DNA of 58,063 nucleotides from Octopus bimaculoides (lineage: Eukaryota). A program made the translations under genes and the position numbers. Below, piece by piece: positions 36,001 through 55,985 of the stretch. Within the stretch, counting starts at the first letter, position 1, and each line of letters starts with the position of its first letter. The notes under the pieces are model-generated. The model did no database searches and had not been told where the DNA came from. It saw only the letters and a program-made list of their open reading frames with translations. Where the stretch lies: the NCBI RefSeq assembly GCF_001194135.2, contig NC_068982.1:99553047-99611109 (forward strand), in the 5' to 3' direction.

Positions 36001-36499
36001 GTGAGTTTATATTTATTTTTATGCTTACAGAAAGTGATTTTTATGTGTGTAATATTTGTTTTCCTGACACTAAATCAACGTGGAAAAACTTTCAGAACTT
36101 CGAGGGAATTTTGTAAATCAATGTAACAATGAATGTCATTTTTAACCCGTCGATGTATATATCCTGATATATCTGTCTGTTATAGAAATTATTTCAATCA
36201 CTTTTTTTTTCCTTTACCTCGTGGACGATAAAGTATATTCTCGTTTCCTAATACTTTAATTAATTTCTGGTAAGAGCTTCCATATTGTGGAGATCGTGAT
36301 CATTCTATTATAAATTCCTCCGTAGATAACTAGCATATAACCCTCTGTACACACTCTTTTCAAACTGAAACTAATCAAATGTAAATGCTTCCAAAAAGCT
36401 TCTCTTTAATGTTAAAATATTGTGTTCACAGAAACTAAATTTTGTGCTCTGCCTTAACTGTAGTAAAGCATATTAAACTATTTTAGCATTTATTTTCAG
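36001..36499 (+). other. Candidate 5'-UTR intron of BTB gene 1
   Basis: Strong donor AAGG|GTGAGT at 36001; acceptor tttattttcAG at 36498-36499, 18 nt before the ATG. Confidence 0.55.
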
Positions 36500-36517
36500 A
36501 CATCTTCAGTTAAAAAT

Positions 36518-38839
36518 ATGGACTGTCCTGGTAATCCCGAGAATGCATCGTTAAGAAGATGGTATAGGAGTTTGAGAACCAGCAGCCCATTTAATACGCA
36601 CCTATCTACGCTATTGAAAGCGGGCTTCCTCTGTGACGTTTATTTGAAGGTTGAAGAAACTGTTATTCCAGTACATCGCGTTATCTTGGCGTCTATTAGT
36701 AATTACTTCAAGGAACTGTTTGAAAATGAAGCACTAATAGATAACACTCTAGATCTGACTTTGCAAATTGAAGATGCTGATATTCTAAAGATTATTGTTA
36801 AGTATATCTACCAGGGGGAGGTAACGTTAAATTCCAGTTCTGTTTTTATGTTACTTAATGCCCTCAGTCATATTGATATCAGATATTTAAAAAAGCATTG
36901 TGAACAGTTTCTTTTCGATCGATTGCGACCTATTTTCTTATTTCCAACCTGGGAATTAGCTTGGCGTCACAGTTTGCATGAACTTACGGCTGTATGCTTT
37001 GTTCTTTGTCGTGAAACGCTCTGTAATCAAGTTCTGCGGAGTAAATATATAAAATATATGTCTATAGAATTTATAGAATTTATTATCGACTCCGATCTCA
37101 CCATCGATTTTAACTCGGCTGTTTTAATGAAACTTCTAATTAACTGGTTATCTCATGAGTCTTCTGATCGCTTCCCAAATGTGAAACAAATAGTAAAAAA
37201 AATTCTTTGGAAAAGACCACTTTATGAAGAACAAATAATTGATATTGAAACCTTTTTGTTCCCTTATGACGATGATTTAAAAAAGCTAGTTAAAGATTCT
37301 ATGAGATCCATAATGCAAGAAAACTTATACAGCCCTTCAAAAGATCTTGAACCGAGTGAAGAAATTGTTAAAAAGTCTACTGAATCACAAAGCCAAGAAG
37401 CAGATGAGGTTTTTTATGAAGATCAGGCTGCATGTAATGAAGGCACATTTTCGTATAAAGATATGTATTTTGGAGAAAGCTCTTGTTGCATAAATTATGT
37501 AAATCCGTTAACATGCTCCTTAAACATTGGGGCGAACAAGTCTCTGATTAAATCAAAGTTTACAATAGAATACCTATGCACTCAAGATTCTTTACTCGAA
37601 GAAAATCCGCTATCTGAAGAGTTGCAACAACAGCCGATAGATACCCGAAAATTCTCTGATCCAAACTGGAGTATTATTATTCAAGAGTCAGAAAACCAAG
37701 TAATTGCATTATATTGCTCAATTAGTGAAAATTGGTATAGTTCTAATATGCCAAGATCTATAAAAAATACAATCGGTTTTCTAAATGGCGAGATTGTCTG
37801 TAGGCACGATCGTTCTGGAATAATGATATATAATCTAAAATTGATGAATTGGAGAATTCTACAGCCACCTTATCTGGCGGTAGCTGCTGAGGAGGAATTC
37901 GTTCCATGTTTAGATAATTCGCAAGCAATTTTCTTCACTTGCTCTGGATCGTTATATTCAGCTTGTGCTCTCCGACATCGAAAAAAGAAAGGTTTTAGAA
38001 TAATTGTGAATGAATGGAACCTTGAGGAAAATGTTTGGGATTGTAAAATATCCGTGCGTCCAAATAGACGTGAAGGTTTTGTTATGTCGGTATCACTTGG
38101 CGTTAAAACATCAACAGGTACGTACATATATCTTATGGCATCAGCTACAATACGTAGAATGAAATTAACCGGAGAGTCGAAAAAAATTGCTTCAAATAAG
38201 TCCAATATAAAAGTTAGCATGAAACCAAATGAAATATTTTATGTATACAAAATTAATATGAAGTCTTTGATATGCGAAGAGCTTGGATATCGTTTCAGTG
38301 AACCAGCACATCTTGAGAATGTTCCATCAATCGTCCTAGAAGATCGCATAATTTTTATCCTAGATGTGTATGAAGCGATTGAAGAAAACTTTGAAATGTC
38401 TTTTAAAACACGTTCGCAGTTCCCCTTAGATACGCTGGTACTGTATCATGAAATAAATCTTTGGAGGAGAGTTAAGTTGTTATTGCCTCTACCCCCCTTC
38501 TATGACATGCCAGTTAGGAGAGTCGATGGAAAACTTTATTCTGCCGTATGTATTTCATTTTTTAAAAATTTCATGTTACTAGGACTACATCGAACTCCAC
38601 ACGTATATCAAATTGCTATTTATGATATAGCACGCTTACAGATTACTGTTCTCAGCCCTGTGCCACTTCCAGCAGTCGGGAATATGATGATGACTGCAGT
38701 TGATAATCATCAGCCTATAAACAAGATAACAAATGAATATGCGAAGGACGTCGACCTGATACCTTATCACTTCAATCAATGGCAATTAAGAAACTGGTAT
38801 GGCATTATTGACCCAACTGAAAGCCATACCCCACGGTAG
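36518..38839 (+). CDS. BTB-BACK-beta-propeller protein (divergent KLHL/KBTBD-like, putative Cullin-3 adaptor), 773 aa, single coding exon; paralog 1
   Basis: Uninterrupted ORF; BTB GFLCDVYLKVEETVIPVHRVILASISNYFKELF..IVKYIYQGEV; BACK WELAWRHSLHEL..MSIEFIEFII..LLINWLSHE; six blade-like segments (LYCSISENW, IYNLKLMNW, EWNLEENVW, YKINMKS, LYHEINLW, IYDIARLQ); full-length homology to 50898-53231. Confidence 0.92.
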   Translation: MDCPGNPENASLRRWYRSLRTSSPFNTHLSTLLKAGFLCDVYLKVEETVIPVHRVILASISNYFKELFENEALIDNTLDLTLQIEDADILKIIVKYIYQGEVTLNSSSVFMLLNALSHIDIRYLKKHCEQFLFDRLRPIFLFPTWELAWRHSLHELTAVCFVLCRETLCNQVLRSKYIKYMSIEFIEFIIDSDLTIDFNSAVLMKLLINWLSHESSDRFPNVKQIVKKILWKRPLYEEQIIDIETFLFPYDDDLKKLVKDSMRSIMQENLYSPSKDLEPSEEIVKKSTESQSQEADEVFYEDQAACNEGTFSYKDMYFGESSCCINYVNPLTCSLNIGANKSLIKSKFTIEYLCTQDSLLEENPLSEELQQQPIDTRKFSDPNWSIIIQESENQVIALYCSISENWYSSNMPRSIKNTIGFLNGEIVCRHDRSGIMIYNLKLMNWRILQPPYLAVAAEEEFVPCLDNSQAIFFTCSGSLYSACALRHRKKKGFRIIVNEWNLEENVWDCKISVRPNRREGFVMSVSLGVKTSTGTYIYLMASATIRRMKLTGESKKIASNKSNIKVSMKPNEIFYVYKINMKSLICEELGYRFSEPAHLENVPSIVLEDRIIFILDVYEAIEENFEMSFKTRSQFPLDTLVLYHEINLWRRVKLLLPLPPFYDMPVRRVDGKLYSAVCISFFKNFMLLGLHRTPHVYQIAIYDIARLQITVLSPVPLPAVGNMMMTAVDNHQPINKITNEYAKDVDLIPYHFNQWQLRNWYGIIDPTESHTPR

Positions 38840-40271
38840 TTGAGTTGGTTTTATTTTTACTTCAATTCATTAGCGAAAATTCTTAAATATTCTTACTTAC
38901 ACTTGCGCAGGCACTCTTGCGCACTGCCTTGGAAGCTACTTCCAAGACTGTGCAATACATAAAATGAATTTAATCCTGGTATTATTTATCTTCTAATCAT
39001 TTGATAAAGAAAGAGGAACCAATGTTTTGAAGAACGGACAGTTTGAATTTCTATAAGACTTTTAGTCACCTGTTCATGTAATAATTACAGCTTACCAGAT
39101 TGAATCTCATCAATATTCTGGCTTATATTCAGTCACCAATTATCTGAGCTTAATGACCTGTAAAAGGAGTGACTTTTTTTTTTTTTTTATGCAGAAGCTG
39201 TTGTAGAAAGAATTGACATACACTTTCACTGACTTGTCAAAGATTAATTTTGCAATGATGGGCATCGTTACATTCGTAATTTGACATGGTTTTTAAAAAC
39301 TTTCAAAATATTCCCACCGGTAATGAGCTGAAAGCTGATTGTGAATACTTCGACTGAAATTGTTATAACCCATGACTTTTAATCGTGGTAGATAGTGTGA
39401 TGAAGAAATCTTACGCAAGTTGTTACTGCAATATGTATATGCACACCTACACAACTCGACTTTTCCTAACTTCTCAGGATCTCTTAACAGATTATACTCC
39501 ATACTAAAATTTTAATCTTACTTTCTAAGGTAAAGGAAGGAGTAAAATCGAAGTTCGTACTTAAAGAAAATATGTAAATGTGCCACATGAAACCAAACCC
39601 AAAGACTGAACACTTGCTTTAACAACGGCAGCCATTATTTGGCTTCCATTTACGAAGGATAATGGAAGAGAACAGCACTACTGCCAATAACATTTTAATT
39701 TTCGCTTAATCTTATTCTTACACGTTTTTCAAGATCCAAGTTTATTTATAATGGTAATTACAGTAAATAGTTACCACCTTAGCACACTTCTGGTTCATAC
39801 TCCAATCCAGGTTAAGCATTTTCTATAGAATTGTTTTACAGGATGAATTCAATAGATTATGGTTCAATCAGAACATTATACGTGTTATCTTAATGTTGTG
39901 CTTGATTTGTTCTCAATACCTCCTTGAAAAGCCTACCACTCTCGGAATAAGAGTAACAGACTTCTCTGGAAAATGTGACTTAGTTATTATCAACTAATAG
40001 AAGCTAAAGCGATTCCAGTAATTAAAAAAATTTATAGAGAGTAGTGACAAGTGTTTCTTTTGTTTCTAAAGAAAAACTCTTCTGGAGTAGTAAACATCTA
40101 TATACGCAGTATTGGATGCAATCTTAGACAACATCACTGAAGGCTATATTCTTTGTTATATACTTATCAACACTTAAGTTACATCTATTTTTCACAGTCA
40201 AAAACTAAATCTTATGGAACGAAATCGAAAAAGATCTGTATTGTTTTGTTGCTGTACGACTATTACATTTT

Positions 40272-40306
<35 letters not shown>

Positions 40307-42699
40307 ACATCAGAAAATCTCACATGGCTAGACTTGAACCCACAATCCCAATGACAAGTATAGTACTTGTTCTTTCGCTTCGTAACCATTTTCAGTCCCA
40401 CTGCGTAGTACCTTTCGCAAATTTCTTCCCTACTTTTGAGCTAATTATTTCATTTACTGGAATTTGAACAGAAACTGTATGATAGCGAGATAAATATGTA
40501 CCAATAAAATAAGTATAAAACTAATTATTATTCGACTAAACCCATGAAGGCGATGCACTAGCATGGCCGCAGTCCTATAACCGGTAAAAGACTACATAAA
40601 ATTTTTTAACTATTCATCAGTTTTACAAATGATATTAACGCCATAGGAAATAGATTATTTGAAATAGTTTGTGTGACGTTATATACAGTCTTTTTAAGAC
40701 CTAGTAAAGTCTATCGCTTTCCAGATTTGAAGTCGATTTCTTCCGATAGACAAAAGGTATCGCCCCCTCCCACCCTGACACAGGCTTGATACTTTATCCT
40801 TAAAAGAATTAGCGGGTTTCGGTAGTTCTTACGAGAACCTCTCGCCACGTTGAATCCTTAACGTTACAGTAACTGACTCTTAGACAAGAGACATCACCAA
40901 GCTATTACGTTAATTACCCTTAAAGGAGAAAAAAAATTAATATTGTAGAAACAGTAACAAGAACAATCTTAGAATTATAATTCTTAAGAGGAACCATATC
41001 AACTCATGGAGATGTTCAATTACTATTTATACATGACTTAGTATATCATCAGAAATTTCAAAATGTGCCACTGAAATTCTTAGTTACAAGGCAATATAGA
41101 GAACAAATGGTGTTGATGCGGTATTGAGGCTGGACTGATAGCCTGTAGTTGTATATGACCAACCCGACATGGCTTCTTGAAACCAGACTGAATAAGGAGT
41201 AATCTAAAAGTGAATTTCTGGACTGCAGGTGGAGATAATATAGTGAATGATGTTGGCGCCAAATTTTCACTTAGTAACTTAGTTGCGTTATATTAAATTG
41301 TTCAAACCCAGTTTAGAAACCTTTAGATATTACTGTATATTTTCACTTTAAAAGAAAAAAAAAATGGTCATTTACTTTTAGAAATTCAATGGTTTAAATT
41401 AATGACGGAATCTATTATAGGCCTAGTAGAGTTCTGATCAAGCTTGTGGGCTGAGAGACTTATTTCACAGATGACGTTTGAATGAAATATATATCCACAC
41501 ATTCGTGAATATATTTCTCAGTATGAGGAGAGAGGGAGATGTTTATGCCAGTCACGCGTAGTGAGTTTAGTCTTGTTCTCTCTCCCACCTCTTATGTGTA
41601 TGCGAATATTTTTCGCGAGCCAAAATACAACTGTCAGCAAACAGGCTGAATGTCCAGTCAGCTGCGCTAAATCTGCGTCCAAGTAGCTGCGCCCAATCGT
41701 CTTTCATTCTGAAGGTAAAGAAACATACGTGGAAATATTAAGGCGCATTTCTGAATATACATATCCTAAGTTGTTCACTACTCTTGTTTAGTGTTTAATT
41801 GGATTATTAGTGACAACTTGTGGAATTCTGATTGCAGGCCAAATGGCTTTACTGATTTACTTTCTTAGCTTGTGTTGACTTTAGTTACATTTTGGTATCA
41901 TCTTTGACTACAGAACAGGTCTTAAATGGCTTAACTGGTATTGAAGTATAATAAAACAGCAGGGTTCCACATACGCAGTAAAGTGAGTTACAAAAATTTG
42001 ATCGACATAGTATCCAAAGAGTAAGTAGAAAAAGTTTCCTATAAAATCTTAACATTTAGAAACAGTAAGCAGATTTTATATCATCCTCACAGCCTTAAGG
42101 TTTAAGATAAATGTTGATTTATTTCTCAGTCGAATATATTGAACATACGAAGCAGTTGGTATAAGAGCGGTACCAAGGAAGGTAGTGTAGAAGAGCTTTT
42201 AAAAATGAGAAAAAATTTCAATTTATCGAAGTCCTTTATAAAGATCTTCCCTAAATTCTGAAAATCGGTTAGGATATTGATTTATTGAGACAAAAAAAAA
42301 TCTTAGTGGATCTGTAGGATACCTTCAACCAAACCTAGGAATTGTTACAATGCAATTGTAGAACTTAATCTGAAGTCACTTGCTTTCAAATTATGCTTCA
42401 CGAGTTATGGCTTGCAAATTAGACGTTGTCAAATTAACTTGTTTGCTTGCAGGGTATTGCGTATTGAACAGATTTCCTACCTAGAACATGAAGATTTTCG
42501 TACTTAATAGGTAGACGATTTTACTATTTTCTCTGCTTTTAGATATACATTTATATTATAAACGGTTATAAGGCGGCGAGGTGAGAGAATCATTAGCACG
42601 CTGAACGAAAGATTTTATTTCCCATACGAGCTAACAAAGAGCGGGACATACACAACATTGGGGACATAGTACAATTTAAAAAAATAAAACGTATGATAT

Positions 42700-44240
42700 G
42701 ATGGAAGAATGAAGATGAGAAATGGAAGTGATCTTACCTGCCACGTCACTTACTTGCCATTGTTCCCTGTACTCCATAATATTTATACCATATTTTCCCA
42801 TGAGTTCCTCACTGGTTATCGTACTCGGTAACTTGTCTGGATCACAGTTCATCCTCCACACTTCATAGCCCTCTTTATATTTTTTATTTCATTCCAATGT
42901 TTTTCCGTTATCAACCAGTATGTATATCTCTCACCCCCACCCCATCATTTTGTACGTTCACAAGGACTATATCCTTCCATCCCGTTATCTTATATAGTTC
43001 TTCTTCTGCCTCCACGAACAGAGTACATGCATAGCAATCAGTACGAAGGGAAGTTTCTACATCTTTGTGTGTATTGTTGCTTCATTTTGTTTTCGTGTTG
43101 CTGGGGAGTGGGTAGGTCTAGTGTCTTCAGGGTGAGGGTGGGATGAGGAGTGTATGGATGGGTATTGGGTGGGTTGGAGTGCATGTGAGAGGCCTTATTT
43201 TTTCTCTTTCGTTTCTTCCTTTTCCAGCTCATTTCCCATTCTTTTTCTTTTGCGTTTTCCGCCTCCACCGGTACCATTTCCTCACTTTCTGGCTCCTCTT
43301 GCTGCTTCTTCTGTAGCAATTCCTGGAGTAGCCGCTCCTCCGCTTGGTCGGTGGAGGGCAATTCGCTCTTATGTGGCCCTTCAAGCCACACTTAAAACAG
43401 CGAGGAATTCTACCCTCCACCCTTACATTCATTATGGTATCTTCCACTGACACTGTTTCTACCATTTCTTCCACGGCCTCATTAGACCCCTGAATGACCA
43501 TATTCAACACCTTCCAGTTTGTGCATTTCGTCTTTGTGGCCTGGAGCACCGTAATTTTATCCTCGCTCTCGGCCAAGACTGCTGCCTCTATCCAGGCCAC
43601 ATCTATTTCCAGTGGAATTCCTTCTACCCTTACTCGAGACGCTCTTTATCTCAGTTACCTGGGTAGAAGCACCAGCTCTTCATCTCTCAGTGGTGTCGCT
43701 GCATGTGCCTTTGCTGTACATTCATTTACACATCTCACCTCCACCTCTCCAAATTTATCCCCTCTGGCAAGATAAGTTATCTCTTGCCAGACCGGGCTCA
43801 TCACCTTCTCCACTTGTTCCGTTGTCATTTGGTCTACCTTTCATTTCTTGACCGAGCAGGTCTTGTATATTACCGTTTTTTCCTTAATCCTCTTTGTTGT
43901 TTCAAGCGGGGTGGGGGAGGTACTTCTACATTGTATCCGTCCCGACTTAATAGTCTCGCAAATTTATACATATTAATTTCCACGTTCTCGTTCGTTTCTC
44001 GGGCGACGTCCGCAAACTTCCCTCGTCTTCCTTCTAACTCCTTGTCCATCATATTCACAGACCTCAGCAGTTCCTCCTATGATGTTGATAGCTCAGACCC
44101 GCTAAGGTCTGGGTAAAATATTTTTTTTTTACTGGTCAGGGCCAACTCTCAGAAGAGAAAAAGCACGAACAACTCGCTGCAAAGCAGCAGACAACAATCA
44201 CAAACCTATAAAAGCAATATAACTGACAAACCACACAGAA
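42700..44240 (-). mobile_element. Retroelement ORF1/gag-like remnant (probably L1/Tx1 clade) with CCHC zinc knuckle
   Basis: VRVEGIPLEID..VRVEGRIPRCFKCGLKGHIRANCPP followed by Glu/Lys-rich segment; broken by stops and frameshifts; higher GC than flanks. Confidence 0.75.
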
Positions 44241-44256
44241 AATAGTAGGCGCTCGA

Positions 44257-44404
44257 AAAGCACGCTGAACGAAATGCTTAGCAGTATTTCGCTCGATGCT
44301 TCGTTCTGAGTTAAAATTCCGCCGAAGTCGACCTTGCCTCTCATTCTTTCAGGGTCAATGATTTAAATACAAATTCCAAGCCTGGTGCCTATAGTAGAAA
44401 GGAT
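44257..44404 (+). mobile_element. SINE family 1, partial
   Basis: gcacgctgaacgaaatgcttagcagtatttcg..gttctgagttaaaattccgccgaagtcgacc..gtgcctatagtagaaaggatt. Confidence 0.8.
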
Positions 44405-45399
44405 TTTATAAACAATTATTGGATCGAAGACTGGTTTAGTCGCCGAAAGATAGCAATTATGGGTTGTTAAATTATAGAATTTTGATCCCATTTTAGGAAG
44501 CTCTCAAAAAAAAAAAAGCAGTTAATCGTCAGATTGCAATAATTCTTCCAGTTCTCTAGGTTTTGAGTTCAAATCCCATTGAATTCCTCTTTTTTTTCAG
44601 TGGTATCGACAAAATCCAAAGAATCCAGCAAGCATTAATGTTCAGACCGTTCCACGGAAATTATAAAAGTGGTATTTGGGTTCAAATTGTTTCCTTTACC
44701 CTTCACATTAGAGACACTGTTAAGAACAGTGGCTGAAGGTATTTTGAGATTACAGAACAGTTGTTTCAATTTTGGATGGAGTATTACTGATGAGTATACA
44801 ACTATACAAAGGAAAATCAAATTCTGATTGACATAGTGAATTAAATGTTTACTCCCCCCAATTTTTTTTTACTTCTCAAGGAACGGAATAAAAACACTTG
44901 GATATTTATAAAATATTTGCAGAATCGACAAATTAATAATCGGTAGAATTAAGTATAAAAGGCTAGTTTGATGTGATAATCGAGAAAAACAGCTTTGTCT
45001 GAAAACGGTAATTCACTATATTGAAGTTGAATTTGCACTGATAAACTCAAAATCGGCGTTGCAAGTACAACGTTGACAACACAGACCAAAAAAAAAAATC
45101 AATTGTCTGTCAAAAAATTTGGACCTGAACTAGTTTGACACACAATCCGAGAATGACATTCATTTATTACCATCACGTCAAGATTTTAAGATGCTGAATC
45201 CATAAAATTTTACCGTTTTTGTTTGTTTTTGTCAATAAAACAGATTTTGAGGAACAAGGCATAACAGACACACATATAGAAATTTATTTTTCTTCAAAAA
45301 GTAGGTTTTAAAATTCTATTGAAAATCTAGCAAAGATCTTAAAATTTCTGCAAATCACATCATTGCTTATGCCTAATTTGCATGAATTCAGGTTTCGAT

Positions 45400-45960
45400 A
45401 ATCGTCTTGAGTGCTAAACCTCAGGAAGATCACGAGCTAAGTTTCAACAATAGTCTACCATTATATGCAAGTCCCATCTTCCTTGATACATTTGTTCTAA
45501 TATTTTTTTTTTTTTTTTGTCCTGGTGAAAACGTTATCCCTCCTCATCACTTCTGTCACTAAGATTTTCGGGGGATTTATGAAGGTAGTACAGCTCTACG
45601 CTTATATTTAATCTCAAGTTCTGAAAGTTCTTTAGCATGTTGTCAACTATTTCGGCATGGTTGACTGTTTCCTTGTTTCCCAGAAAGCCATGCTACTACT
45701 TCAATGCTAATTCTTTGAATTTAGAAAGTTCCCATTTATCATTAATTTTCTGATTTGAGGTTCATCAAATACTCCAGTTTTTATCTTTTCAATACTTAGG
45801 GAAATGTCCCACAGATATAGTGAAAACCTGGTTCATCTATCCAGAGATTTAACAAATTGCTTCATAATGCCAAGTTTGATATGGAGTGGAGGTAGAACTT
45901 TTTCTGGTTGGACTAAAGGCTATTTAACAACATTTAAAAATGCCCTGGATATGTTTGCAG
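45400..45960 (-). mobile_element. DNA transposase remnant, probably Chapaev3 (CMC)
   Basis: Minus strand PLVQPEKVLPPLHIKLGIMKQFVKSLD..KIKTGVFDEPQIRKL..SDEEG*RFHQD..MYQGRWD..MVDYC; family name from memory of the PPLHIKLG and GERFHQD motifs. Confidence 0.65.
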
Positions 45961-47560
45961 TCGCCATTCTTTGATCACCCAATACTTTTCCTTGACTCTT
46001 AATAAGATAATATATAAATCATAAACATTCGTACTAAAATTTTTCAGATAAACATGCATTTTTCTGAAAATGAGGAAAACTGTAGGCAGTATCTTGATCT
46101 CTAGACGCGATGGTACAGAATGGATTCCATTTTTGCATTCAGCATCTCAAAAAAAAAAAAAAAATTCAAATCATGTAAAAAGAAAAATCGTCTTTAGAAC
46201 AAAATAATTGTTGGGTTAGGGTTATTGAAACAAGTACCAATGCATTAAAATCTTTTCGATTCTCATTTAAAGATTAATCTATGTAGGATTAATCACTGAA
46301 TGCCTTTGCAATTTATGTTTGGCAATGGTTTTTAGACGAGGCAAAATATTTATATTATATGGAAAGAGTTAAAACCTTTATACATTTCTTCAAATATATG
46401 GATTCAGCCAATAAGTGAAAACGATTTGTAGAATTCAGTTAGTAAGGATTCCCGAAAAGAGAAAGCCATAATGGATATTGCAGCAAAGGTTAGATTTTAC
46501 TGTTGATATTTGAATGGAATCACAAAATTTACTATTTACAGCTTTTGGAAAAAGTTTACATAAGAGAAACTGTAAGTGAAACAAGTGTTAGGAACTTTAC
46601 AGCTGGTCTAGATTGTGGAATAGTTTTCATTTGTGTCAGGGCATATTTTAAATTTATTACCAACAAAATATTGTTTAGAGAGTCAGGAAGTAATCAAATG
46701 CACTGACAGGGAAGTTTTAAGTGTTCCTCGTTTATATTTAATGAACCATCGAATTCATAAGATACATGAGAATAAAATTGACATATCAATAGTAGAAGTG
46801 GTGTAACGCCGATAAATAAAGAGTGAAACATCGAACCACTATGTCGGGAGACAACGACATTTATTACAATTATATAAGAAACGTTTTTGAAGACATTATC
46901 AGAAACACCACTCTTCAGCCGGCTTTCTACCAGTTTTGACGTGTTCTCCATAATCTAAGACAGACGGATGGTACCTATATAAAACGAAACGAACCCTTAT
47001 ACTTCTTACAAATTAATGACACCCAACTCCGACGTGATATTAAGCAGAGACGGATTACGAACTCGCTCTTGAAGTGATGCTCGACGTGATAAAAAGAGAG
47101 ATGACTCAAACAGATCAGCACAGCCTGTTTTTGAAAAGGTTTTATACGCTTTATCCGACTATTAATACTACGCATATTCTCGGAGGACGCTGTATAGTGT
47201 ATCGCTAAAGGGGAAAAACTACATTTCTGACGGGGAAAGATATTAACTTACCAACATATTTGATTTGATTTTCTTTCTCTATATATTATATACATATATT
47301 CTCATTTTAATGAATGTATGTATATTTCTACAAGTTATGAGGCCATTAATAGATAGCCGAAATACTTCAGTTAAAGGTGCCTTAGACGGAAGATTGAATA
47401 GATTCCTAGTTCAATTTTAGGTTTTAACTTGTTGAGATTCTCTTTTGTGCCTGACATTATTACGAATCAAAATTTCTAGAGTTTAACCGGAAAAGACCTC
47501 CCCTTCGATCCCTATGAGAGTGATCTAAGAGAAGATTTTCCGGCTACATATATACATATT

Positions 47561-48465
47561 GGTTTCAAATTTTGGCACAAGAACAGCAATTTCAAAATAG
47601 GGGTAAGTCGATTATATCGACTCTAATTGAAGACTGGTATTTATTTTATCGACCCCAGAAGGATGAAAGGTAAAGATGACTGCGGTGGAATTTGAACTCA
47701 GAACGTAAAGACTGATGAAATGCCGCTAAGCATTTTGCTCGGCGTGCTAATGATTCAGACTGCTCGCCGCCTTATATATTAACGCATAGTTATAATTAGC
47801 TGTGTTTTACATCGAAGTTAATCTAAAAGCTAATTTTAACCGTTTCTGTAATATGACTTTCGATTGTGGATACAATAACGGTTGCCTGCCTCGGACTAGG
47901 AACTAATTTGTTTATAATTGGCTTCAATAAATGCAGATGAATACCAGCTGGATAAACTTAAATTTCTTCCGTCCTGAGTTCAAATTCAACAGAGGTCGAC
48001 TATACCTTTCATCCTTTAGAGGTCAAATTAAGTACCAGTGAAACACTGGAATCAATGAAATCGACTAGTCCCTTCCCCCAAAATTTCAGGTATTGTGCCT
48101 TTAGTAGAAATGTTTTGAAGGTGGCGAGCTGGCAGAGTCGTTAGCACGCCAGACGAAATACTTAACGGTAATTCACCCGTCGTTACGTTCTGTGTTCAAA
48201 TTCCGCCGAGGTCGACTTCGTCTTTCATCCTTTCGGGGTCAATGTAATCCCTCTCCTAATTTTCAGGCTTTGTGCCTATAGTAGAAAAGGATTGGAGGAG
48301 GAAGCTAGTCGATTATATTGATCCCAGTGCTCAACTGGTATTTATTTCATCGACCTCGAAAGGACGAAAGGCAAAGTCGACCTTAGCGAAATTTGAACTC
48401 AGAACGTAAGGACGGAGAAATGCTGCTAAACATTTTTCCCAGCATGCCAACGATTCTGCCAGCTT
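47561..48465. mobile_element. Cluster of four family-1 SINEs: 47561-47773 (-), ~47970-48110 (+), 48118-48291 (+), ~48295-48465 (-)
   Basis: Each carries gttcaaatt..gtcgac..ctttc.tcc; orientations read directly. Confidence 0.85.
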
Positions 48466-50824
48466 AATAATAATAGTGTCTGCACTTTGTGACATAAATG
48501 TAATAGTAAGCACAGTTTGTTTTTCCAACGTGAAGTAAAAAAAAAAAAAATATCTAGCAAGCTTGACTTGAACCATGCGGATCAGCAAGTTGGTTATTTC
48601 CCATTTATACTTATGTAACTCCTGGCTAACAATTTGGTGCATATAACGCCACCAACATCCTCCAGTGTAAACATGGTTAACGGAGGTTCCTTCTGGTAAA
48701 GTGCATGGTGGTGTCATTTTAGTTTCGAAGACTGACTACACTAGTTACCTTATATTAGGAAATAATTGTCCTTGTACAGGACTTAAGTTTGAAAAAAGAA
48801 ACAAAAACCTAAATTTTAGTTTCCTCCTATCTTGGATTTTAAATTAACAAAGAAGGCATAGCTTACTTTTCAGAGAAAATTGCTGCAATGCCCTACTCCA
48901 ATGGACGTCGTGTTGGAATCTTATGGACTTTGAATTATTTATTAACATCTATTGAGCCACTACATTCATTAAAAGATAAAACCTGGGTGGGTGGTGCAAA
49001 CAAGTTTCCAAGACCCCCCCCCCCACTAGTCAAAAAAAATCTGCACCTTTGTAACATTCCCAAACTGTTTCTGGTGAACACATATGCTTCTCGTTCTTCT
49101 GAAGAACAGTAACAGCTCATAAAAACTGGTAATGAAAGTAAAAAGAAAACTAGTGCTACATTTCACGCACGTTAAAGTTTTCGCTGCCGAGAAAAATTAC
49201 CCCCACCCTAAGAAAAGGAATCGCACATGCGTTTGCGGGAAAAGAGTGCGGAAAAAAAAAACGTTTGTAAGGTTATTTGCTTTTATTGCATACCAATCAC
49301 CCCTTAGTACTGTTTGCAACAGTCGCTTTCTTCTTTTGCTGCTGCCAGAGCAGCACTTTAAACGTCGTTTCTAGCTGTCTGTACTTACAAACTAGAATAC
49401 TATATTCGATAAGCCAGCTTTAATGTTGTGTTAGTCATCTTCCTTTAAAGGCACGAGCGGAGGAGTTCAAGAGAGTGTGTGTGCGCGCGTGTACTCTAAT
49501 TCATTTAGTTGAGGTCATTATGACTGTGGTCCAAATTTAGAAACTTGAAAATATTCCATTATGAGTAGAATATACAAATTGACTATAGACAGCAGAGAGA
49601 AAAAAATTAATGCTATTCCAGAATTAAAGGTTGTACTTTAATAAGCGAGAATAATTGAATTGTGAAGTTGGCGCACGACACTGTAGAAAAGTCAGGTTGC
49701 CCTCCCTCCAAAATTGATAGCGTGTTAAAGTTTAACAATTTCGTTAGATCAAATACTATACTTTAAAAAACCACCACTTGAAGCTTTATATAGCCGTTGA
49801 ACCCAGAAACTGATATACAAGATTTGCGAACTACGCATTTAGAGTTGATACGGTTCTTAAAGAATTCTCCCGTTTGTGACTGAGAACCTCCAGTTCATGA
49901 ATTAGAGTACATATAGTTGTTGCTGACCCATTCACGGAGGATACGTTCTTAATTCTTGTTGACGGGTAATTAAAAAATTAACTGTAGTGTATCTAATGAA
50001 TTTATCAACTGCTCCAGTCACAGCTGAACGAATCTGTTATACATGAACTGCATGTGATATTAAATAAAAAAAAAAAAACTTCAATTTTCATCAATGAAGA
50101 ATAGATTGATTATGAACTCCAATGGAATTAAGAATCTTCCTATGATCCACCATCAGACGGTCATCCTGAGAAAATTACCCAAGTATTTAGGGGCAATAAA
50201 GATAAAAGCAGGCATTCGAAAATGAAATCGACAAGTTTTCTACAAAATTACGCTTCTTTAAGCAACAATAGCTTCTGAATTGTTCAAGGAAGTCACTACT
50301 AAAACTAAATAGGCAGTGTGTGCAAAGGGTCAATATACTGGACGAAGGAGGAAAATATTACATCCACTGAGTAATTTAAAAAATGGGTAGGATGCTACGC
50401 AGTATTGCTTTCTCTCTCGTATCTAACACCAGCCTGGAGTTCGCAACCCTACTCACGTCACACATCATCCAGTTTAGGCAACTATATATGTGGAAGCTAC
50501 TAAGTAATGATTGAGGGTCTTGTGTTGGTAAGTAACAGTGTGAAGTGGTAAGGTCAAAAGTTAATCATAAATAGTCGCCATTATAATATAGCACTCGAAT
50601 AGGCAAAGGATATAAAAGGATATGATAGCAGCCTATGTTGGATAGTCTAATTAAATCAGTCAATATTTGGGATAAATACATAACAAGAATGACTTGTATG
50701 TGTAAAATTTAATGATCATAGTATTACTGAAGTTTGAATTAGAAACTTGTTGACTAGCTTCAATAAATTATTCATAAAATTTCTAGTTAAAAATGGACAC
50801 TAAATCGATGTAGATTTAAACATT

Positions 50825-50830
50825 TTTATT
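50825..50830 (-). promoter_or_regulatory. Candidate polyadenylation signal of BTB gene 2
   Basis: AATAAA on the minus strand about 70 nt after the stop codon. Confidence 0.4.
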
Positions 50831-50897
50831 ATGTATTGATATATAAAAAAAATCTTTGCTAATTGTCAGAACAGTTGTAAACTGCGTCGTTTTTATA

Positions 50898-53231
50898 TCA
50901 TTCGACAAATCCACACCAATCGTTCAATTGCCAGTCCTTAAAGTGATATGACAACAGATCAACTTCTTTGGCAACATTATCTTGTGTCATATTTAAGGGC
51001 CGGTGGATATCGATAGAAAATAGAAACAATTTCCTGATTGCTGGAAGTGGTATAGGACTGAGAATATTTACTTGTAAATGGAAGACATCATAGACAGCAA
51101 TCTGAAAGATGTGGGGAGCTCTATGCATGCCTATCAACACGAAATTCTTAGAAAATAAAATAGTTGTAGAAAAACACACTTTGCCTAGTTTCTTCATTGG
51201 TAAATCACAAAACGGAGGTAGTGGTATGCCGAGTGCCACTCCACTCCAAGAATTTTTGCCTTTTAAATCCAGCACCAATCCATTTATGTAGTACGGTTTG
51301 CGAAAGTAGTAAGAATATTGAAAGTTCTCGTGAAGCTTTGCAATAGAATCTAAAACAAAAAGAATACGATCTCCTAGAATTAATATCGGAACCTGATCGA
51401 GATACGTGGGCTCACTAAAACGCACTCCAACCTCTTCATGTACTAAAGTCTCCATATTAATTTTAAATACATAAAATATTTCATTTGGTTTCATAATAAC
51501 TTTTGTTTCAGTTTCATTGCGACCACAAGTTACAAAGTCAAGTTTCGTAGAGAATCCAAACGAATTTTCAGCCGCAGCACTTTCACTCTTACGAATATCA
51601 GACCTTTTCGTTCTATTGTATAATGCCGTCACTGTCGCCATAAGAAAAACATTCAAGTTTGAGGAGGTTTTGACACTTAATGATACGGATATGACATCAC
51701 CTACAGGTTTGTTTGGATACACGGAAGTTATATAAATCCAAACACTTTCGGTAGTATCCCATCTATTCAAAGCAAAACTTAATTTGTCATTGTTTCGACT
51801 AGTTACAGCACACACTGAATATAGTAGCCCTGAATACGTGAAAAAAGCAGGTTGGACATTACCCAAACATGGAATATCGTCAGTGTTGCGATCAGTCAAC
51901 GGACAAGGTGCAGGCAAAATCATCCAGCTAAACATTTCTAGATTATATAATATTATTACATTGCCTTCGCGTTTGCATGCAAGGAAATTACCAACGAAAC
52001 CAATGGGATCCTGAATAGATAAAGGGAAATATGTGTTGTGCCATGTATGGCTATAAGAACAGTATAGTGAAACTGTATGGTGATTCGATTCTTGTACAAG
52101 AAAACTCCAGTTTGGAGCAAAATTTTCATAAGAATCAAATTGGCGCAGAATAATTTCAGATTTAACTTTAAGACGATTTCCATCTATTGTTGTATACGGA
52201 GGGGCTTGGAGACATTGACACCCACTTGTACCATCTGACTTGATCAAGTGTATCTTTGACTCGAGTCCGGCTCGATGTTGAGTATTACAATTTCTAAATA
52301 TTCTATGAACACGAGCAGAAACCTGAAGCAAATTTCTGTCACTACATGCTGCATTGTCTATGTTATCAAACTGAGCAAAACTATTATTGGTATATATAAT
52401 TTGTTTTTGGCCATTGTCAGAGGTTATAAATACATGTTGCTGCAATAATGGGAGGAGTTCTGTAATAATTTCTTCTAAACTTTCATAAGAATTCATAAAT
52501 AAAATAACGTTCTCATATTCTCGTCGAAGAAGTGGAGTTTCTTGTAAAAATATTTCTAATAAATGTTTTGCCTCTAAAAGGCGTCTAAGTGGATTGTAAG
52601 AAAGCCATAGAATGATAAGTTTTATTGCATGTACCGTGTTAAGATTAATCGTTATCTCTTCGTTTCCGAGAACAGACTTTAAAAATTCTGCAGATAATTC
52701 TTTTATGCTGTCATTCTGTAAAACCATACTACAGAGCGTTTCACAACAAAAAACTAAGCATACAGTCGCAAGTTGATGTAAGTTGTGACGCCAAGCCAGT
52801 TCCCAGATTTGAAATCCATTTACTGGTCGGAGCCCCGCCATCAGAAATTGAGCACAATGAGCTTTCAAAGGATTTAGATCGATCTGATCAAGAACTTTTA
52901 GCAGCTGGTAAACAATCTTATATGACAGAGTTACCTCGCCCTTGTATATATACCTGAGAATCAGGCACAATATGTTCGAATCTTCAATAAGTGGTGTTAA
53001 ATCCAAAGAGTCAATGGTTTCCTTTTCAAATTGGCTTTTGAAATAATCACTTGCAGACGCCAAAATAATACGGTGAGCCGGGATGACAGTAAAACCAACC
53101 TTCAAGTCGACATCACAGAGGAAGCCATCAACGTATAAGGTACTTAGATACGCATCAAATGGTCGACCATATTCCGAGTCTTTAAAGTATCTTTTAATCG
53201 TAGAACCGGTGGCGATTTCGGTACACTGCAT
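50898..53231 (-). CDS. BTB-BACK-beta-propeller protein, 777 aa from MQCTE, single coding exon; paralog 2
   Basis: Uninterrupted ORF; BTB GFLCDVDLKVGFTVIPAHRIILASASDYFKSQF; BACK WELAWRHNLHQL..LIILWLSYN; same six blade segments as paralog 1; start moved from 53267 to ATG 53231 because ttgttctttgttgacAG| (53246-53245) is an acceptor 13 nt upstream and the context aaatATG matches paralog 1. Confidence 0.92.
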   Translation of the reverse strand: MQCTEIATGSTIKRYFKDSEYGRPFDAYLSTLYVDGFLCDVDLKVGFTVIPAHRIILASASDYFKSQFEKETIDSLDLTPLIEDSNILCLILRYIYKGEVTLSYKIVYQLLKVLDQIDLNPLKAHCAQFLMAGLRPVNGFQIWELAWRHNLHQLATVCLVFCCETLCSMVLQNDSIKELSAEFLKSVLGNEEITINLNTVHAIKLIILWLSYNPLRRLLEAKHLLEIFLQETPLLRREYENVILFMNSYESLEEIITELLPLLQQHVFITSDNGQKQIIYTNNSFAQFDNIDNAACSDRNLLQVSARVHRIFRNCNTQHRAGLESKIHLIKSDGTSGCQCLQAPPYTTIDGNRLKVKSEIILRQFDSYENFAPNWSFLVQESNHHTVSLYCSYSHTWHNTYFPLSIQDPIGFVGNFLACKREGNVIILYNLEMFSWMILPAPCPLTDRNTDDIPCLGNVQPAFFTYSGLLYSVCAVTSRNNDKLSFALNRWDTTESVWIYITSVYPNKPVGDVISVSLSVKTSSNLNVFLMATVTALYNRTKRSDIRKSESAAAENSFGFSTKLDFVTCGRNETETKVIMKPNEIFYVFKINMETLVHEEVGVRFSEPTYLDQVPILILGDRILFVLDSIAKLHENFQYSYYFRKPYYINGLVLDLKGKNSWSGVALGIPLPPFCDLPMKKLGKVCFSTTILFSKNFVLIGMHRAPHIFQIAVYDVFHLQVNILSPIPLPAIRKLFLFSIDIHRPLNMTQDNVAKEVDLLSYHFKDWQLNDWCGFVE

Positions 53232-54566
53232 ATTTAAAATAAACCTGTCAACAAAGAACAATGTCATTAAAAGAAAATCAGAGCTAAAATGAGAAATTGT
53301 TGGCGTTGTAATGAATATATTTGTATTATACGGATCAAAGAAACGAGTTATTAAACATTTCTACATTATTCGAACAGGAAGCTTTCGATTTGGAATACGT
53401 CATAAAAATGATAAAAATTGAACACGCAAAATTGAGCGCGCAGAAAAGCTAGCTTCCAAATCCTGTTTCCTGATTTAGTAGGAACCAACTTTAAATATTT
53501 GTACCATTTTCCTAAAATTTTTCTGAAATTAATGAATTACAAAATGGGATTTAGCGTGAAAAATTACATCAATATACCAAATTTTCACATAGTTTCAAAA
53601 GCTGACAGCTACTGAATAAGTCTGTAATTTCAAAATATTGGCAATCCATTGTTTTTAGTCTCAGAGTTGCCATCAATGTTCGACAATTTCCGTAAAGTCT
53701 TTATTTACTTTCATGTCCTGTTGAACCTTACATTCGCTTTGATGTGGGCGAAAAACGAAACATGGCCCTTTTTTTTTTTTTTTTTGTATGCATGTACGTG
53801 TATGCGAAAGATAATGGGTGTGCGTGTGTGTNNNNNNNNNNNNNNNNNNNNNNNNNNNNNNNNNNNNNNNNNNNNNNNNNNNNNNNNNNNNNNNNNNNNN
53901 NNNNNNNNNNNNNNNNNNNNNNNNNNNNNNNNNNNNNNNNNNNNNNNNNNNNNNNNNNNNNNNNNNNNCAAATATTCCAATAAGAAAATGACATTAAATT
54001 CTGCTAACGAATAAAATTTTAATCACAAAATCGAATTTCAACTAACTATACTTCATACGCATTTATGTTAAAATGGACCAGTGTAGCAACAATAATTATG
54101 TAGTCGGCAAAACTGTGAAACACGATTCATATTACAAAACTATTTTTCTCTATATCTACTCTGATAGTGTTGAAGATTCAAATATATAGGCATAAGATGG
54201 GCCTTTACACCAGTCATATGAATACGAATATTTGTCGAAATCAATACAAATTCTAGAAGTTCAGCTCTATCCGCGATACTGACGCTTCGGAAATAAAAAT
54301 TTTATAACAAAGCCGTTTTAGTAGAGCAGAGAGAAAAAATAAATTGTCGTTGAACCATGTTACTATTAATTTATGAACATACGGTGGTGCACCAGCATGA
54401 CCGCAGCCACTTGGCTGAAACACATAAATAAATATATTTAAAAAAATAATAAAAATTTTTAAAAAGCATAACGGGTTTTTAAGAACAAGATCTATCAACA
54501 TACACAGCCCAATGATATAATTATTACAAGAACTTTCCAATTATTTTCCTTAACAAAATACAATAT

Positions 54567-54782: not shown

Positions 54783-55985
54783 ATAAAATACTATATTGAC
54801 TACATTACATATAGGACGACCTACAATTACAAAATGGCAAATACTATTATACGTGAATATTTCTATTTTAAATTGTATCCGACAAAAAGTAATGTACAAA
54901 AGATTTAAAGAATATATATTTATACCGATTACCTTCACTTGCAGTTATTCGTGATCCACCAGTGGCAGTAAAAACTTTTTAATAAACTTCTACAAATAAG
55001 AAAGTGAGTTAATTTAAATATTGCACACGTTAAATAGTTTCTGTTGGATTTAAATATGCAACACTATATTTCTTTTAAAAAAATATGGTTGAAGGTTCGT
55101 TTTTTAGTTATTCATTTATTTGTTATTTTATTGTGATATTATAAATGTAATACATAACTTTGTGTGTGTATCAGGCATGTGCCGTCAGTAATTACTCAGA
55201 GCAGGCAGTTTGCGACCTTTATGTAGTAAAACACAAACGCGCGACTGAGATGAAGGCAAATATATTTCTGCCTTTATAGTACGTAAAGAAAAAGTGTTGT
55301 AGAAATGTACGCAGCACGTGTACTATACCAGTACTATGCGTAGCTTAAATACTGAAATTAAAAAGAAGGGGCAAACTATCCCTACCAAATCGACAAAAAA
55401 ATAAAATATTTTGCATTTTATGCATAGCAATCAGAGTAACCTTCATAATTTTATTGAATTAGGTGCATATTTTGCCATGAGAGGAAAATGTTGCTATCGA
55501 TTTATTCAAGGTAGGCACTGCCCATCTTGCCTATCTAGGTGGCACTTCCCTGATATATATATATATATATATATATANNNNNNNNNNNNNNNNNNNNNNN
55601 NNNNNNNNNNNNNNNNNNNNNNNNNNNNNNNNNNNNNNNNNNNNNNNNNNNNNNNNNNNNNNNNNNNNNNNNNNNNNNNNNNNNNNNNNNNNNNNNNNNN
55701 NNNNNNNNNNNNNNNNNNNNNNNNNNNNNNNNNNNNNNNNNNNNNNNNNNNNNNNNNNNNNNNNNNNNNNNNNNNNNNNNNNNNNNNNNNNNNNNNNNNN
55801 NNNNNNNNNNNNNNNNNNNNNNNNNNNNNNNNNNNNNNNNNNNNNNNNNNTATATATCCCTAAAATAAACTTTCTTCTCTACTATCGATGACTTAAGTAC
55901 TGTCATGAATTAGTCGCAATGCAATCAACTATAATCGTCCTCTATTCCTGTAAAAAGATTAGGTTATATAAATTGACGTAAAGGT

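What the first reader, a model, noticed from the sequence alone, without database searches (positions are those of the whole stretch)
36518..53231. Convergent pair of intronless BTB-BACK genes with a non-canonical beta-propeller: candidate lineage-specific Cullin-3 adaptor family
Seen: two intact ~775-aa ORFs, tail-to-tail 12 kb apart and homologous along their length (e.g. 32/49 identical in MKPNEIFYV..DRIIFILD). After BTB and BACK there is a ~130-aa poorly alignable linker, then six blade-like units with the YD/N..W pattern but no Kelch GG dipeptides, then a shared unusual tail AK[DE]VDLxxYHFxxWQLxxWxG. Established: BTB-BACK-Kelch proteins are Cul3 substrate adaptors whose propeller selects the substrate. 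Inference: a divergent, possibly cephalopod-restricted adaptor subfamily with two substrate specificities, perhaps heterodimerising through BTB. Caveat: single-exon KLHL-like expansions occur in other molluscs.
Basis: partly seen in the sequence, partly recalled or inferred. Interest (0 to 1): 0.7.

Follow-up and report, generated by a model that had tools for sequence, protein, structure and literature searches.

The report
Cephalopod-only pair of degenerate Kelch adaptors
Two neighbouring octopus genes encode members of a small, cephalopod-restricted branch of the well-known BTB-BACK-Kelch family of ubiquitin-ligase adaptors, with a propeller too diverged for standard Kelch models to detect and with the usual Cullin-3 contact motif deleted.

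Summary
Two intact single-coding-exon genes (A 36518-38839 +, 773 aa; B 53231-50898 -, 777 aa) lie tail-to-tail 12.06 kb apart in Octopus bimaculoides and are 38-41% identical along their length.

Both have BTB, BACK, a ~110-aa disordered linker, a six-bladed propeller and a conserved aromatic tail. The propeller is not a new fold. AlphaFold (pTM 0.80) gives six four-stranded blades, and a profile built only from this family's blades retrieves only Kelch propellers among the 60 PDB hits shown (KLHL20 E=2e-12). It is a degenerate Kelch domain without the Gly-Gly pairs.

An exhaustive HMMER search of 1.84 billion cluster representatives found only 11, and every one that carries a name is from a coleoid cephalopod. 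The convergent pair is conserved in O. vulgaris and Argonauta. Both copies are under purifying selection (propeller dN/dS: B 0.21, A 0.56).

One caveat is new. The A/B clade has deleted the BTB phi-x-E triplet that docks Cullin-3, whereas its cephalopod paralogues keep it. Cul3-adaptor function is therefore plausible but not secure.

Expression, dimerisation and Cul3 binding could not be tested. Verdict: a lineage-specific variant of a known family, of moderate interest.

The parts
36518..38839 (+). Gene A: single coding exon, 773 aa plus stop; BTB-BACK-linker-propeller-tail
   Evidence: ORF. The exact protein is in the public collection on O. bimaculoides chromosome CM046602.1. Orthologues: O. 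vulgaris (85.6% aa over 578 codons) and Argonauta P0007 (38.7%).
36486..36509 (+). Splice-acceptor-like pyrimidine tract with AG (ttattttcag / acatcttcag) just upstream of the A start codon; possible 5'-UTR intron end
   Evidence: Read directly; inference only, no transcript data.
36608..36913 (+). A: BTB/POZ domain (aa 31-132)
   Evidence: Pfam PF00651, E 1.4e-21; KLHL3 4hxi E 4.5e-15.
36725..36748 (+). A: shortened BTB alpha3-beta4 loop (aa 70-77, NEALIDNT) lacking the phi-x-E Cul3-contact triplet
   Evidence: Alignment with KLHL3 (M-S-E), KBTBD2 (L-S-E) and the paralogues (F-R-E etc.). In the gapless phmmer alignment M-S-E pairs with A-L-I.
36950..37321 (+). A: 3-box/BACK helical region (aa 145-268)
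   Evidence: Pfam BACK aa 145-230, 19.0 bits (cut-off 20.9). The KLHL3 alignment runs to aa 229. Helices reach aa 268 in the low-confidence full-length model.
37322..37648 (+). A: poorly conserved, probably disordered linker (aa 269-377), present at this length only in octopod A/B
   Evidence: No secondary structure. Alignment gaps in the other family members. dN/dS 1.66, CI 0.67-9.9.
37649..38704 (+). A: six-bladed degenerate Kelch propeller (aa 378-729). Blades: I 384-410 plus closing strand 723-729; II 418-448; III 471-513; IV 522-593; V 604-656; VI 676-711
   Evidence: AF2 pLDDT 79.7, pTM 0.80. Blade map. Foldseek top hits are Kelch-type. Blade profile hits only Kelch proteins. dN/dS 0.56.
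38705..38836 (+). A: conserved C-terminal tail (aa 730-773) with AKDVDLIPYHFNQWQLRNWYG
   Evidence: Motif conserved in the octopod A/B sequences and largely in distant paralogues. dN/dS 0.26. Low model confidence, with one short strand at aa 755-757.
38840..50897 (.). 12,058-bp interval between the two stop codons; repeat-rich, with a CCHC gag-like fragment at 43232-43600 (-)
   Evidence: The interval is 7.2 kb in Argonauta and 8.3 kb in O. vulgaris.
50898..53231 (-). Gene B: single coding exon, 777 aa plus stop
   Evidence: The exact 777-aa protein is public, with >=90% identical orthologues in O. vulgaris (CAI9717220.1) and O. sinensis (XP_036356701.1). Argonauta orthologue P0006 is 48.6% identical.
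53232..53267 (-). Non-conserved upstream extension of the mechanical ORF B; crosses an acceptor-like ttctttgttgacag ending at 53245; not coding
   Evidence: In L007 the ATG is absent and an in-frame TGA is present.
52842..53129 (-). B: BTB/POZ domain (aa 35-130 of the 777-aa protein), including the shortened alpha3-beta4 loop (FEKE--TIDSLDL)
   Evidence: Pfam E 1.4e-15; loop alignment.
52467..52811 (-). B: 3-box/BACK region (aa 141-255)
   Evidence: Pfam BACK 23.2 bits, above the 20.9-bit cut-off.
52128..52466 (-). B: weakly constrained linker (aa 256-368)
   Evidence: dN/dS 0.67-0.78; poor alignment with A.
51009..52127 (-). B: six-bladed degenerate Kelch propeller (aa 369-741), with a ~21-aa longer BC loop in blade IV than A
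   Evidence: Aligned to the A model. dN/dS 0.21, CI 0.11-0.38.
50901..51008 (-). B: conserved C-terminal tail (aa 742-777), AKEVDLLSYHFKDWQLNDWCGFVE
   Evidence: dN/dS about 0.2.

Best explanation
A and B are old inverted duplicates. The duplication happened in the octopod lineage before Octopus and Argonauta split. They belong to a small, coleoid-cephalopod-restricted, single-coding-exon subfamily of the BTB-BACK-Kelch (KLHL/KBTBD-like) superfamily.

Shown here:
- BTB and BACK/3-box modules are present.
- The C-terminal domain is a six-bladed propeller whose blades are recognisably, though only weakly, Kelch repeats that have lost the Gly-Gly pair.
- The C-terminal aromatic tail is conserved and constrained.
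- Both genes are under purifying selection, strongest on the propeller and tail.

Inferred from the family:
- Each protein dimerises through its BTB domain.
- It uses the top face of its propeller (BC and DA loops, the most A/B-divergent part) to bind a specific partner protein.
- It presents that partner to a Cullin-3-RING ligase for ubiquitylation.
- The ~110-aa disordered linker between BACK and propeller gives unusual reach or flexibility.

The canonical phi-x-E Cul3 contact is deleted in this clade. Any Cul3 docking would therefore have to rest on the 3-box/BACK groove and an altered short loop that keeps a conserved [LI]-[ID] pair.
For: Architecture: Pfam BTB and BACK; KLHL3, KBTBD2 and gigaxonin BTB-BACK alignments.

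Propeller: AF2 on a 13-sequence alignment gives pLDDT 79.7, pTM 0.80 and about 28 strands in six blades. The top Foldseek PDB hit is a designed six-blade Kelch, E 3.4e-10. The top named viral-library hits are poxvirus Kelch/BTB proteins. The blade profile retrieves only Kelch propellers among the 60 hits shown (SAKe 1.6e-14, KLHL20 1.8e-12, KEAP1 ~1e-7). Paralogue P0013 passes the Pfam Kelch_1 cut-off, 21.1 vs 20.1 bits.

Lineage restriction: 11 representatives among 1.84 billion, all named ones coleoid.

Conserved convergent pair: Argonauta and O. vulgaris. Orthology is backed by bootstrap 0.92 and 0.98.

Constraint: B dN/dS 0.36 (propeller 0.21); A 0.65 (CI 0.45-0.98; propeller 0.56; tail 0.26).

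Top-face BC loops are the most divergent part between A and B. The role of BC/DA loops in substrate binding and of the C-terminal strand in closing blade I comes from PMC3597819.
Against: - The phi-x-E triplet of the BTB alpha3-beta4 loop is absent from A, B, both Argonauta orthologues and P0008, because of a 2-6-residue deletion. Six paralogues keep it. In KEAP1 its phi residue buries the largest interface area with CUL3 (PMC10564622), and the triplet makes the hydrophobic-pocket and H2-helix contacts in KLHL11 (PMC3597819).
- BACK scores are marginal.
- No expression, binding or dimerisation data could be obtained.
- A evolves markedly faster than B, which could mean relaxed function.
- The lineage-restriction search used a profile of only two sequences, so very remote relatives in other molluscs could have been missed.
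Confidence: 0.55

Rival explanations
1. Cul3-independent or pseudo-adaptor role. The octopod A/B clade (with P0008) has lost productive Cul3 docking. It now acts either as a dimeric propeller scaffold, for example cytoskeletal or trafficking as some Kelch proteins are, or as a regulator. As a regulator it would sequester substrates, or heterodimerise with Cul3-competent partners and so blunt or redirect their ligase activity.
For: The clade-specific deletion of the phi-x-E loop contrasts with its retention (F-R-E, F-Q-E, F-L-E, C-Q-E) in the other cephalopod family members. The importance of the motif is documented in PMC3597819 and PMC10564622. In the Argonauta A orthologue the loop is almost gone (CVAG--KHLDL). 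The inserted linker and the faster evolution of A fit a shift in function.
Against: The BTB, 3-box and BACK helices are otherwise conserved and align to KLHL3 through aa 229. The 3-box groove contributes a large part of the KLHL11-Cul3 interface and could be enough. The shortened loop keeps a conserved hydrophobic-acidic pair ([LI]-[ID]-D/S/G) that might substitute. BTB-BACK dN/dS is below 1 in B, at 0.53.
Confidence: 0.3
2. A and B work as an obligate heterodimer, one adaptor built from two adjacent paralogues, like mammalian KBTBD6/KBTBD7.
For: The pair has stayed adjacent and convergent since before the Octopus-Argonauta split. The BTB domain is among the best-conserved stretches between A and B. 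Precedent: KBTBD6 and KBTBD7 are adjacent, intronless, lineage-specific paralogues that assemble one CUL3 ligase (PMC10565993).
Against: No test of dimerisation was possible. Retained linkage of duplicates is common without physical interaction. The two copies evolve at very different rates. This reading also overlaps with both explanations above rather than excluding them.
Confidence: 0.1
3. The ORFs are non-functional retrocopies or annotation artefacts, and the C-terminal half is not a real domain.
For: Single-exon structure; surrounding transposon debris; no expression evidence obtained.
Against: Intact ORFs of ~750-780 aa are kept in at least four octopod genomes, including Argonauta. dN/dS is significantly below 1, with the strongest constraint on the propeller and tail. 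The fold prediction is confident.
Confidence: 0.03

Closest known systems
BTB-BACK-Kelch proteins (KLHL family; e.g. KLHL3, KLHL20, KEAP1)
   Same: Domain order BTB, then 3-box/BACK, then a six-bladed propeller closed by a C-terminal strand. The BTB-BACK aligns best to KLHL3 (E 4.5e-15). The family's blade profile matches KLHL20, KEAP1, KLHL12 and KLHL2 repeats.
   Different: - No Gly-Gly pair in any blade.
- Pfam Kelch models do not detect A or B.
- The phi-x-E Cul3 contact is deleted.
- A ~110-aa disordered linker is inserted between BACK and propeller.
- A 36-44-aa conserved aromatic tail follows the propeller.
- No orthologue was detected outside cephalopods.
KBTBD proteins (e.g. KBTBD5/KLHL40, KBTBD10/KLHL41, KBTBD2)
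   Same: Atypical Kelch repeats that depart from the consensus, very uneven BC-loop lengths, and an extended C-terminus beyond the closing strand (PMC3597819). The model here likewise has long BC loops in blades IV and V and a short extra strand in the tail (aa 755-757).
   Different: No sequence-level match of the propeller or tail to any KBTBD chain in the PDB. Whether the tail strand joins blade I as a betaE strand could not be checked. KBTBD2 keeps L-S-E in the BTB loop.
Mammalian KBTBD6/KBTBD7 pair
   Same: Adjacent, intronless, lineage-specific paralogous BTB-Kelch genes (PMC10565993). They are a precedent for a two-gene adaptor.
   Different: Independent origin, mammals versus octopods. 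Heterodimerisation of A and B is untested.
Poxvirus BTB-Kelch proteins (e.g. vaccinia A55 group)
   Same: Top structural matches in the viral predicted-structure library (E 1.8e-9). They are also diverged, intronless BTB-Kelch genes.
   Different: Unrelated origin. The viral proteins are reported to bind Cul3 tightly (abstract of bioRxiv 10.1101/461806, seen). TM-scores here are only 0.3-0.5.

Membership tests
BTB-BACK-Kelch superfamily (KLHL/KBTBD) | N-terminal BTB/POZ domain | tested here: met
   PF00651: A E 1.4e-21, B E 1.4e-15; PDB BTB matches.
BTB-BACK-Kelch superfamily (KLHL/KBTBD) | 3-box/BACK helical domain directly after BTB | tested here: met
   PF07707: B 23.2 bits (cut-off 20.9), A 19.0 bits (just below). 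Continuous alignment to KLHL3 BTB-BACK through aa 229. Met, but marginal for A.
BTB-BACK-Kelch superfamily (KLHL/KBTBD) | C-terminal six-bladed beta-propeller homologous to Kelch repeats | tested here: met
   AF2 pTM 0.80 with six four-stranded blades. Foldseek top hit is a designed six-blade Kelch, E 3.4e-10. Blade profile hits only Kelch propellers, KLHL20 E 1.8e-12.
BTB-BACK-Kelch superfamily (KLHL/KBTBD) | Propeller closed by a C-terminal betaA strand completing blade I | tested here: inconclusive
   The strand order in the model fits: three N-terminal strands, five complete blades, then one extra strand at aa 723-729.
Canonical KLHL-type Kelch repeat | Consensus Gly-Gly pair ending strand B, Tyr in strand C, Trp in strand D; detectable by Pfam Kelch models | tested here: not met
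   No Gly-Gly in any blade. Strand C carries an aromatic in five blades (Y in I, II, IV, VI; W in III). Trp is present in strand D of blades I, II, III and V only. No Pfam Kelch hit for A at E<=10 or for B at E<=1. In the alignments the Gly-Gly lies in an insertion relative to the family profile.
Cul3 substrate adaptor (CRL3 receptor) | phi-x-E motif in the BTB alpha3-beta4 loop that inserts into Cul3 H2/H4 (PMC3597819, PMC10564622) | tested here: not met
   Deleted or absent in A, B, Argonauta P0006 and P0007, and P0008. Present in P0009-P0013 and P0020.
Cul3 substrate adaptor (CRL3 receptor) | Physical binding to the Cul3 N-terminal domain and BTB-mediated dimerisation | not testable with these tools
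Needs AlphaFold-Multimer or biochemistry.
KBTBD subgroup | Extended C-terminus adding a short betaE strand to blade I (PMC3597819) | tested here: inconclusive
   A conserved 36-44-aa tail with a short predicted strand at aa 755-757, pLDDT about 50-60. Its pairing partner is unknown.
Any named bilaterian KLHL/KBTBD orthologue group | One-to-one orthologue of the C-terminal half outside cephalopods | tested here: not met
   Profile search of 1.84 billion representatives found 11 hits at E<=1e-3, and all named ones are coleoid cephalopods. Limitation: the profile was built from two sequences.

The most novel reading that the evidence does not exclude
In the octopod lineage, a cephalopod-specific BTB-BACK-Kelch gene lost its canonical Cullin-3 docking loop, gained a long disordered linker and then duplicated. 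The resulting A/B pair now works without Cul3. It would act as a propeller scaffold, or as a pseudo-adaptor (possibly an A:B heterodimer) that competes with or modulates the Cul3-competent paralogues. That would be a natural example of a ligase adaptor turned into a non-ligase regulator.
Probability: 0.2. Interest if true: 0.5.

Novelty: new variant of a known kind. Interest (0 to 1): 0.33.

Why it matters
BTB-Kelch adaptors decide which proteins a Cullin-3 ligase destroys. Lineage-specific expansions of such adaptors are one way animals gain new regulation. This is a small family found only in coleoid cephalopods, the group known for neural and behavioural novelty. Standard domain models miss its substrate-binding domain, and public annotation names its members inconsistently ('ring canal kelch', 'kelch 38', 'kelch-like 2/11', 'uncharacterized').

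The clade-specific loss of the Cul3-contact motif gives a simple, testable question: do these proteins still bind Cul3? If they do, they show how tolerant the BTB-Cul3 interface is. If they do not, they show a ligase adaptor being repurposed.

The practical gain is modest but real: a defined family, a blade map, and a sensitive way to recognise degenerate Kelch propellers by searching with a single-blade profile.

Tried and rejected
1. The word-indexed protein search failed. All three homologous-protein runs (C-terminal half, 13-sequence profile, BTB-BACK) returned nothing or one hit, not even the query's own public entry. I therefore could not fetch canonical KLHL sequences for a profile-profile comparison and used the blade-profile search instead.

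2. Full-length AlphaFold with only A and B in the alignment gave pLDDT 34, which is unusable.

3. The whole-domain C-terminal profile against PDB sequences gave nothing significant, only marginal Kelch hits at E 0.7-2.8. The single-blade profile was the informative version.

4. Logan contigs did not serve as expression evidence. L007 and L008 are colinear with genomic DNA and end in repeats, so they are genomic. The L010 ends show no poly(A) tail.

5. AATAAA scan: 148 sites against ~133 expected in this AT-rich DNA, so it is uninformative.

6. Literature searches for cephalopod BTB/Kelch gene-family work and for the accession, locus and run identifiers found no paper on this family.

7. I could not place the unnamed ENA assembly ERZ21867824, source of P0008, P0009, P0011 and P0012. 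There is no nucleotide similarity to the octopod or Sepia-like loci, so its organism remains unknown.

8. Rejected idea: the propeller is WD40-like or a new fold. The closure topology, the blade-profile hits and the Foldseek hits all point to Kelch.

9. Rejected idea: the genes are dead retrocopies. Conservation and dN/dS contradict it.
Full report
**Observation.** The window is AT-rich, gap- and microsatellite-rich animal DNA. An exact-protein look-up places it on Octopus bimaculoides chromosome CM046602.1 of assembly GCA_001194135.2, around 99.58 Mb.

Two long ORFs occupy the stated interval. A is 36518-38839 (+), 773 aa. B is 50898-53267 (-), 789 aa as a mechanical ORF. It is the public gene model. 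In a second octopod, genomic contig L007 at 86% nucleotide identity, the upstream ATG is missing and an in-frame TGA closes the extension.

The stop codons are 12,058 bp apart and the genes converge. A and B are 38% identical and 59% similar over their whole length. By my hand count from that alignment, the quoted 49-residue stretch is 32/49 identical. Pfam finds BTB in both and a weak BACK, and no Kelch model in either. PDB sequence matches stop at about residue 262. The linker is ~110-115 aa. 'Intronless' should read 'single coding exon', because acceptor-like sequences lie just upstream of both start codons. That last point is inference only.

**What the C-terminal half is.** The half-protein alone found nothing in the word-indexed search. 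An exhaustive HMMER search with an A+B profile against 1.84 billion cluster representatives found only 11 proteins at E<=1e-3. All have a BTB domain and the same C-terminal domain; only some reach a detectable BACK score.

With a 13-sequence alignment of that domain, AlphaFold gave a confident model (pLDDT 79.7, pTM 0.80). It is nearly all-beta, with about 28 strands that fall into six four-stranded blades. Three N-terminal strands plus one late strand (aa 723-729) make up blade I. This is the closure described for KLHL Kelch domains (PMC3597819).

Foldseek's best PDB match is a designed six-blade Kelch protein (E 3.4e-10), followed by generic propellers at low TM-scores. In the viral predicted-structure library most named top hits are poxvirus Kelch/BTB proteins.

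At the sequence level the whole-domain profile was not significant against the PDB. A single-blade profile built from 63 blades of the family retrieved only Kelch propellers among the 60 hits shown: SAKe designs 1.6e-14, KLHL20 1.8e-12 with matches across its repeats, KEAP1 ~1e-7, KLHL12, KLHL2 and IVNS1ABP. The canonical Gly-Gly falls in an insertion relative to the family profile. Diverged paralogues also keep weak Pfam Kelch matches in several blades, and one is above the Kelch_1 cut-off.

The propeller is therefore a degenerate Kelch domain, not a new kind. Atypical repeats, very uneven BC loops and an extended C-terminus are already described for KBTBD proteins.

**Family, age and constraint.** Named members come from O. 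bimaculoides, O. vulgaris, O. sinensis, Argonauta hians and Sepia pharaonis. Four more come from one unnamed ENA assembly that I could not place. Every member I could inspect on DNA is one uninterrupted ORF.

The convergent pair is conserved in O. vulgaris (gap 8.3 kb) and in Argonauta (gap 7.2 kb). A neighbour-joining tree pairs A with Argonauta P0007 (bootstrap 0.92) and B with P0006 (0.98), and places P0008 as a single-copy outgroup. The duplication therefore predates the Octopus-Argonauta split. The long linker is specific to this octopod clade.

| Region (O. bimaculoides vs O. vulgaris) | dN/dS | 95% CI |
|---|---|---|
| B, whole gene | 0.36 | 0.25-0.53 |
| B, propeller | 0.21 | 0.11-0.38 |
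| B, linker | 0.67 | 0.34-1.68 |
| A, whole (578 codons) | 0.65 | 0.45-0.98 |
| A, propeller | 0.56 | 0.35-0.96 |
| A, tail | 0.26 | 0.07-0.76 |

Both genes are functional. A is the faster-evolving copy. The tail motif F-x2-[WY]-x-L-x2-W-x-G is conserved in the octopod A/B sequences, and most of it recurs in the distant paralogues.

**Mechanism.** By architecture the most likely role is a BTB-dimerised substrate receptor. Its propeller top face binds a partner and presents it to a Cullin-3 ligase. Between A and B the BC loops are the least conserved class (32% identity, 5% invariant), against 47% in the strands. This fits different partners, but the evidence is weak.

One result cuts against a simple Cul3 reading. 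In an alignment with the KLHL3 and KBTBD2 sequences printed by the PDB search, the phi-x-E triplet of the alpha3-beta4 loop (M-S-E, L-S-E) is kept in six cephalopod paralogues as F-R-E, F-Q-E, F-L-E or C-Q-E. It is removed by a 2-6-residue deletion in A, B, both Argonauta orthologues and P0008. This triplet inserts into the Cul3 H2/H4 pocket in KLHL11 and SPOP (PMC3597819). Its phi residue buries the largest interface area in KEAP1-CUL3 (PMC10564622).

The 3-box/BACK region is retained, and the short loop keeps a hydrophobic-acidic pair, so binding is not excluded. I rate 'still a Cul3 adaptor' at about 0.55 and 'Cul3-independent scaffold or pseudo-adaptor' at about 0.3.

**Novelty and limits.** No paper mentions these loci or this family. 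Public names are automatic and inconsistent. I class the finding as a new variant of a known kind: a lineage-restricted BTB-BACK-Kelch branch with Gly-Gly-less repeats, an inserted linker, a conserved tail and a deleted Cul3-contact motif.

Limits:
- The taxonomic search used a two-sequence profile.
- The organism behind four members is unknown.
- Expression, dimerisation and Cul3 binding are untested.

Noticed in passing
window 2389-2664 (+): Stop-to-stop ORF with CWSPY (CWxP) and NPIIY (NPxxY) motifs. It looks like the TM6-TM7 exon of a rhodopsin-type peptide GPCR. Pfam 7tm_1 gives E 6e-7 (29.6 bits, just under the 30.5 cut-off). The best PDB relatives are somatostatin, vasopressin V2 and oxytocin receptors (E ~1e-6).
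   Followed up: partly
window 31009-32450 (+) and 33188-33580 (+): Transposon debris in the GC-richer stretch (~43% GC) upstream of gene A: a LINE-type reverse transcriptase (RVT_1 E 2e-21, plus zf-RVT) and a mariner-type Transposase_1 fragment (E 1e-12).
   Followed up: partly
window 43232-43600 (-): A gag-like ORF with a CCHC zinc knuckle (E 1e-3, below the Pfam cut-off), inside the interval between genes A and B. That interval is longer here (12.1 kb) than in O. vulgaris (8.3 kb) or Argonauta (7.2 kb).
   Followed up: partly
window, many sites (e.g. ~4700-5080, ~7130-7500, ~11680-12540, ~27450-27880, ~53832-53967, ~55580-55850): Numerous runs of N (assembly gaps) flanked by TG/CA and AT microsatellites. 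One gap lies only ~600 bp upstream of the gene B start, so its promoter and 5' exon region are incomplete in this assembly.
   Followed up: no
L006 20592-22337 (-) (O. vulgaris orthologue of gene A): The public gene call for the O. vulgaris A orthologue is 822 aa, against 773 aa in O. bimaculoides. Its C-terminus also differs after the W-x-G motif (…IIDRTEKATAYGS). The ends of the A protein are therefore not well conserved or not consistently annotated.
   Followed up: no
family members P0009-P0013, P0016, P0020 (other loci: L003, L004, L009, L010): Cephalopods carry at least three further lineages of this family, with a short linker and an intact phi-x-E motif. In O. bimaculoides one is LOC106867820 on another chromosome, which has a 367-aa isoform named 'kelch-like protein 11 isoform X2'. 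They would be natural positive controls for Cul3 binding.
   Followed up: partly
window 37870-38220 (-): A 116-aa antisense ORF lies inside the gene A propeller region. There is no evidence that it is anything but chance.
   Followed up: no
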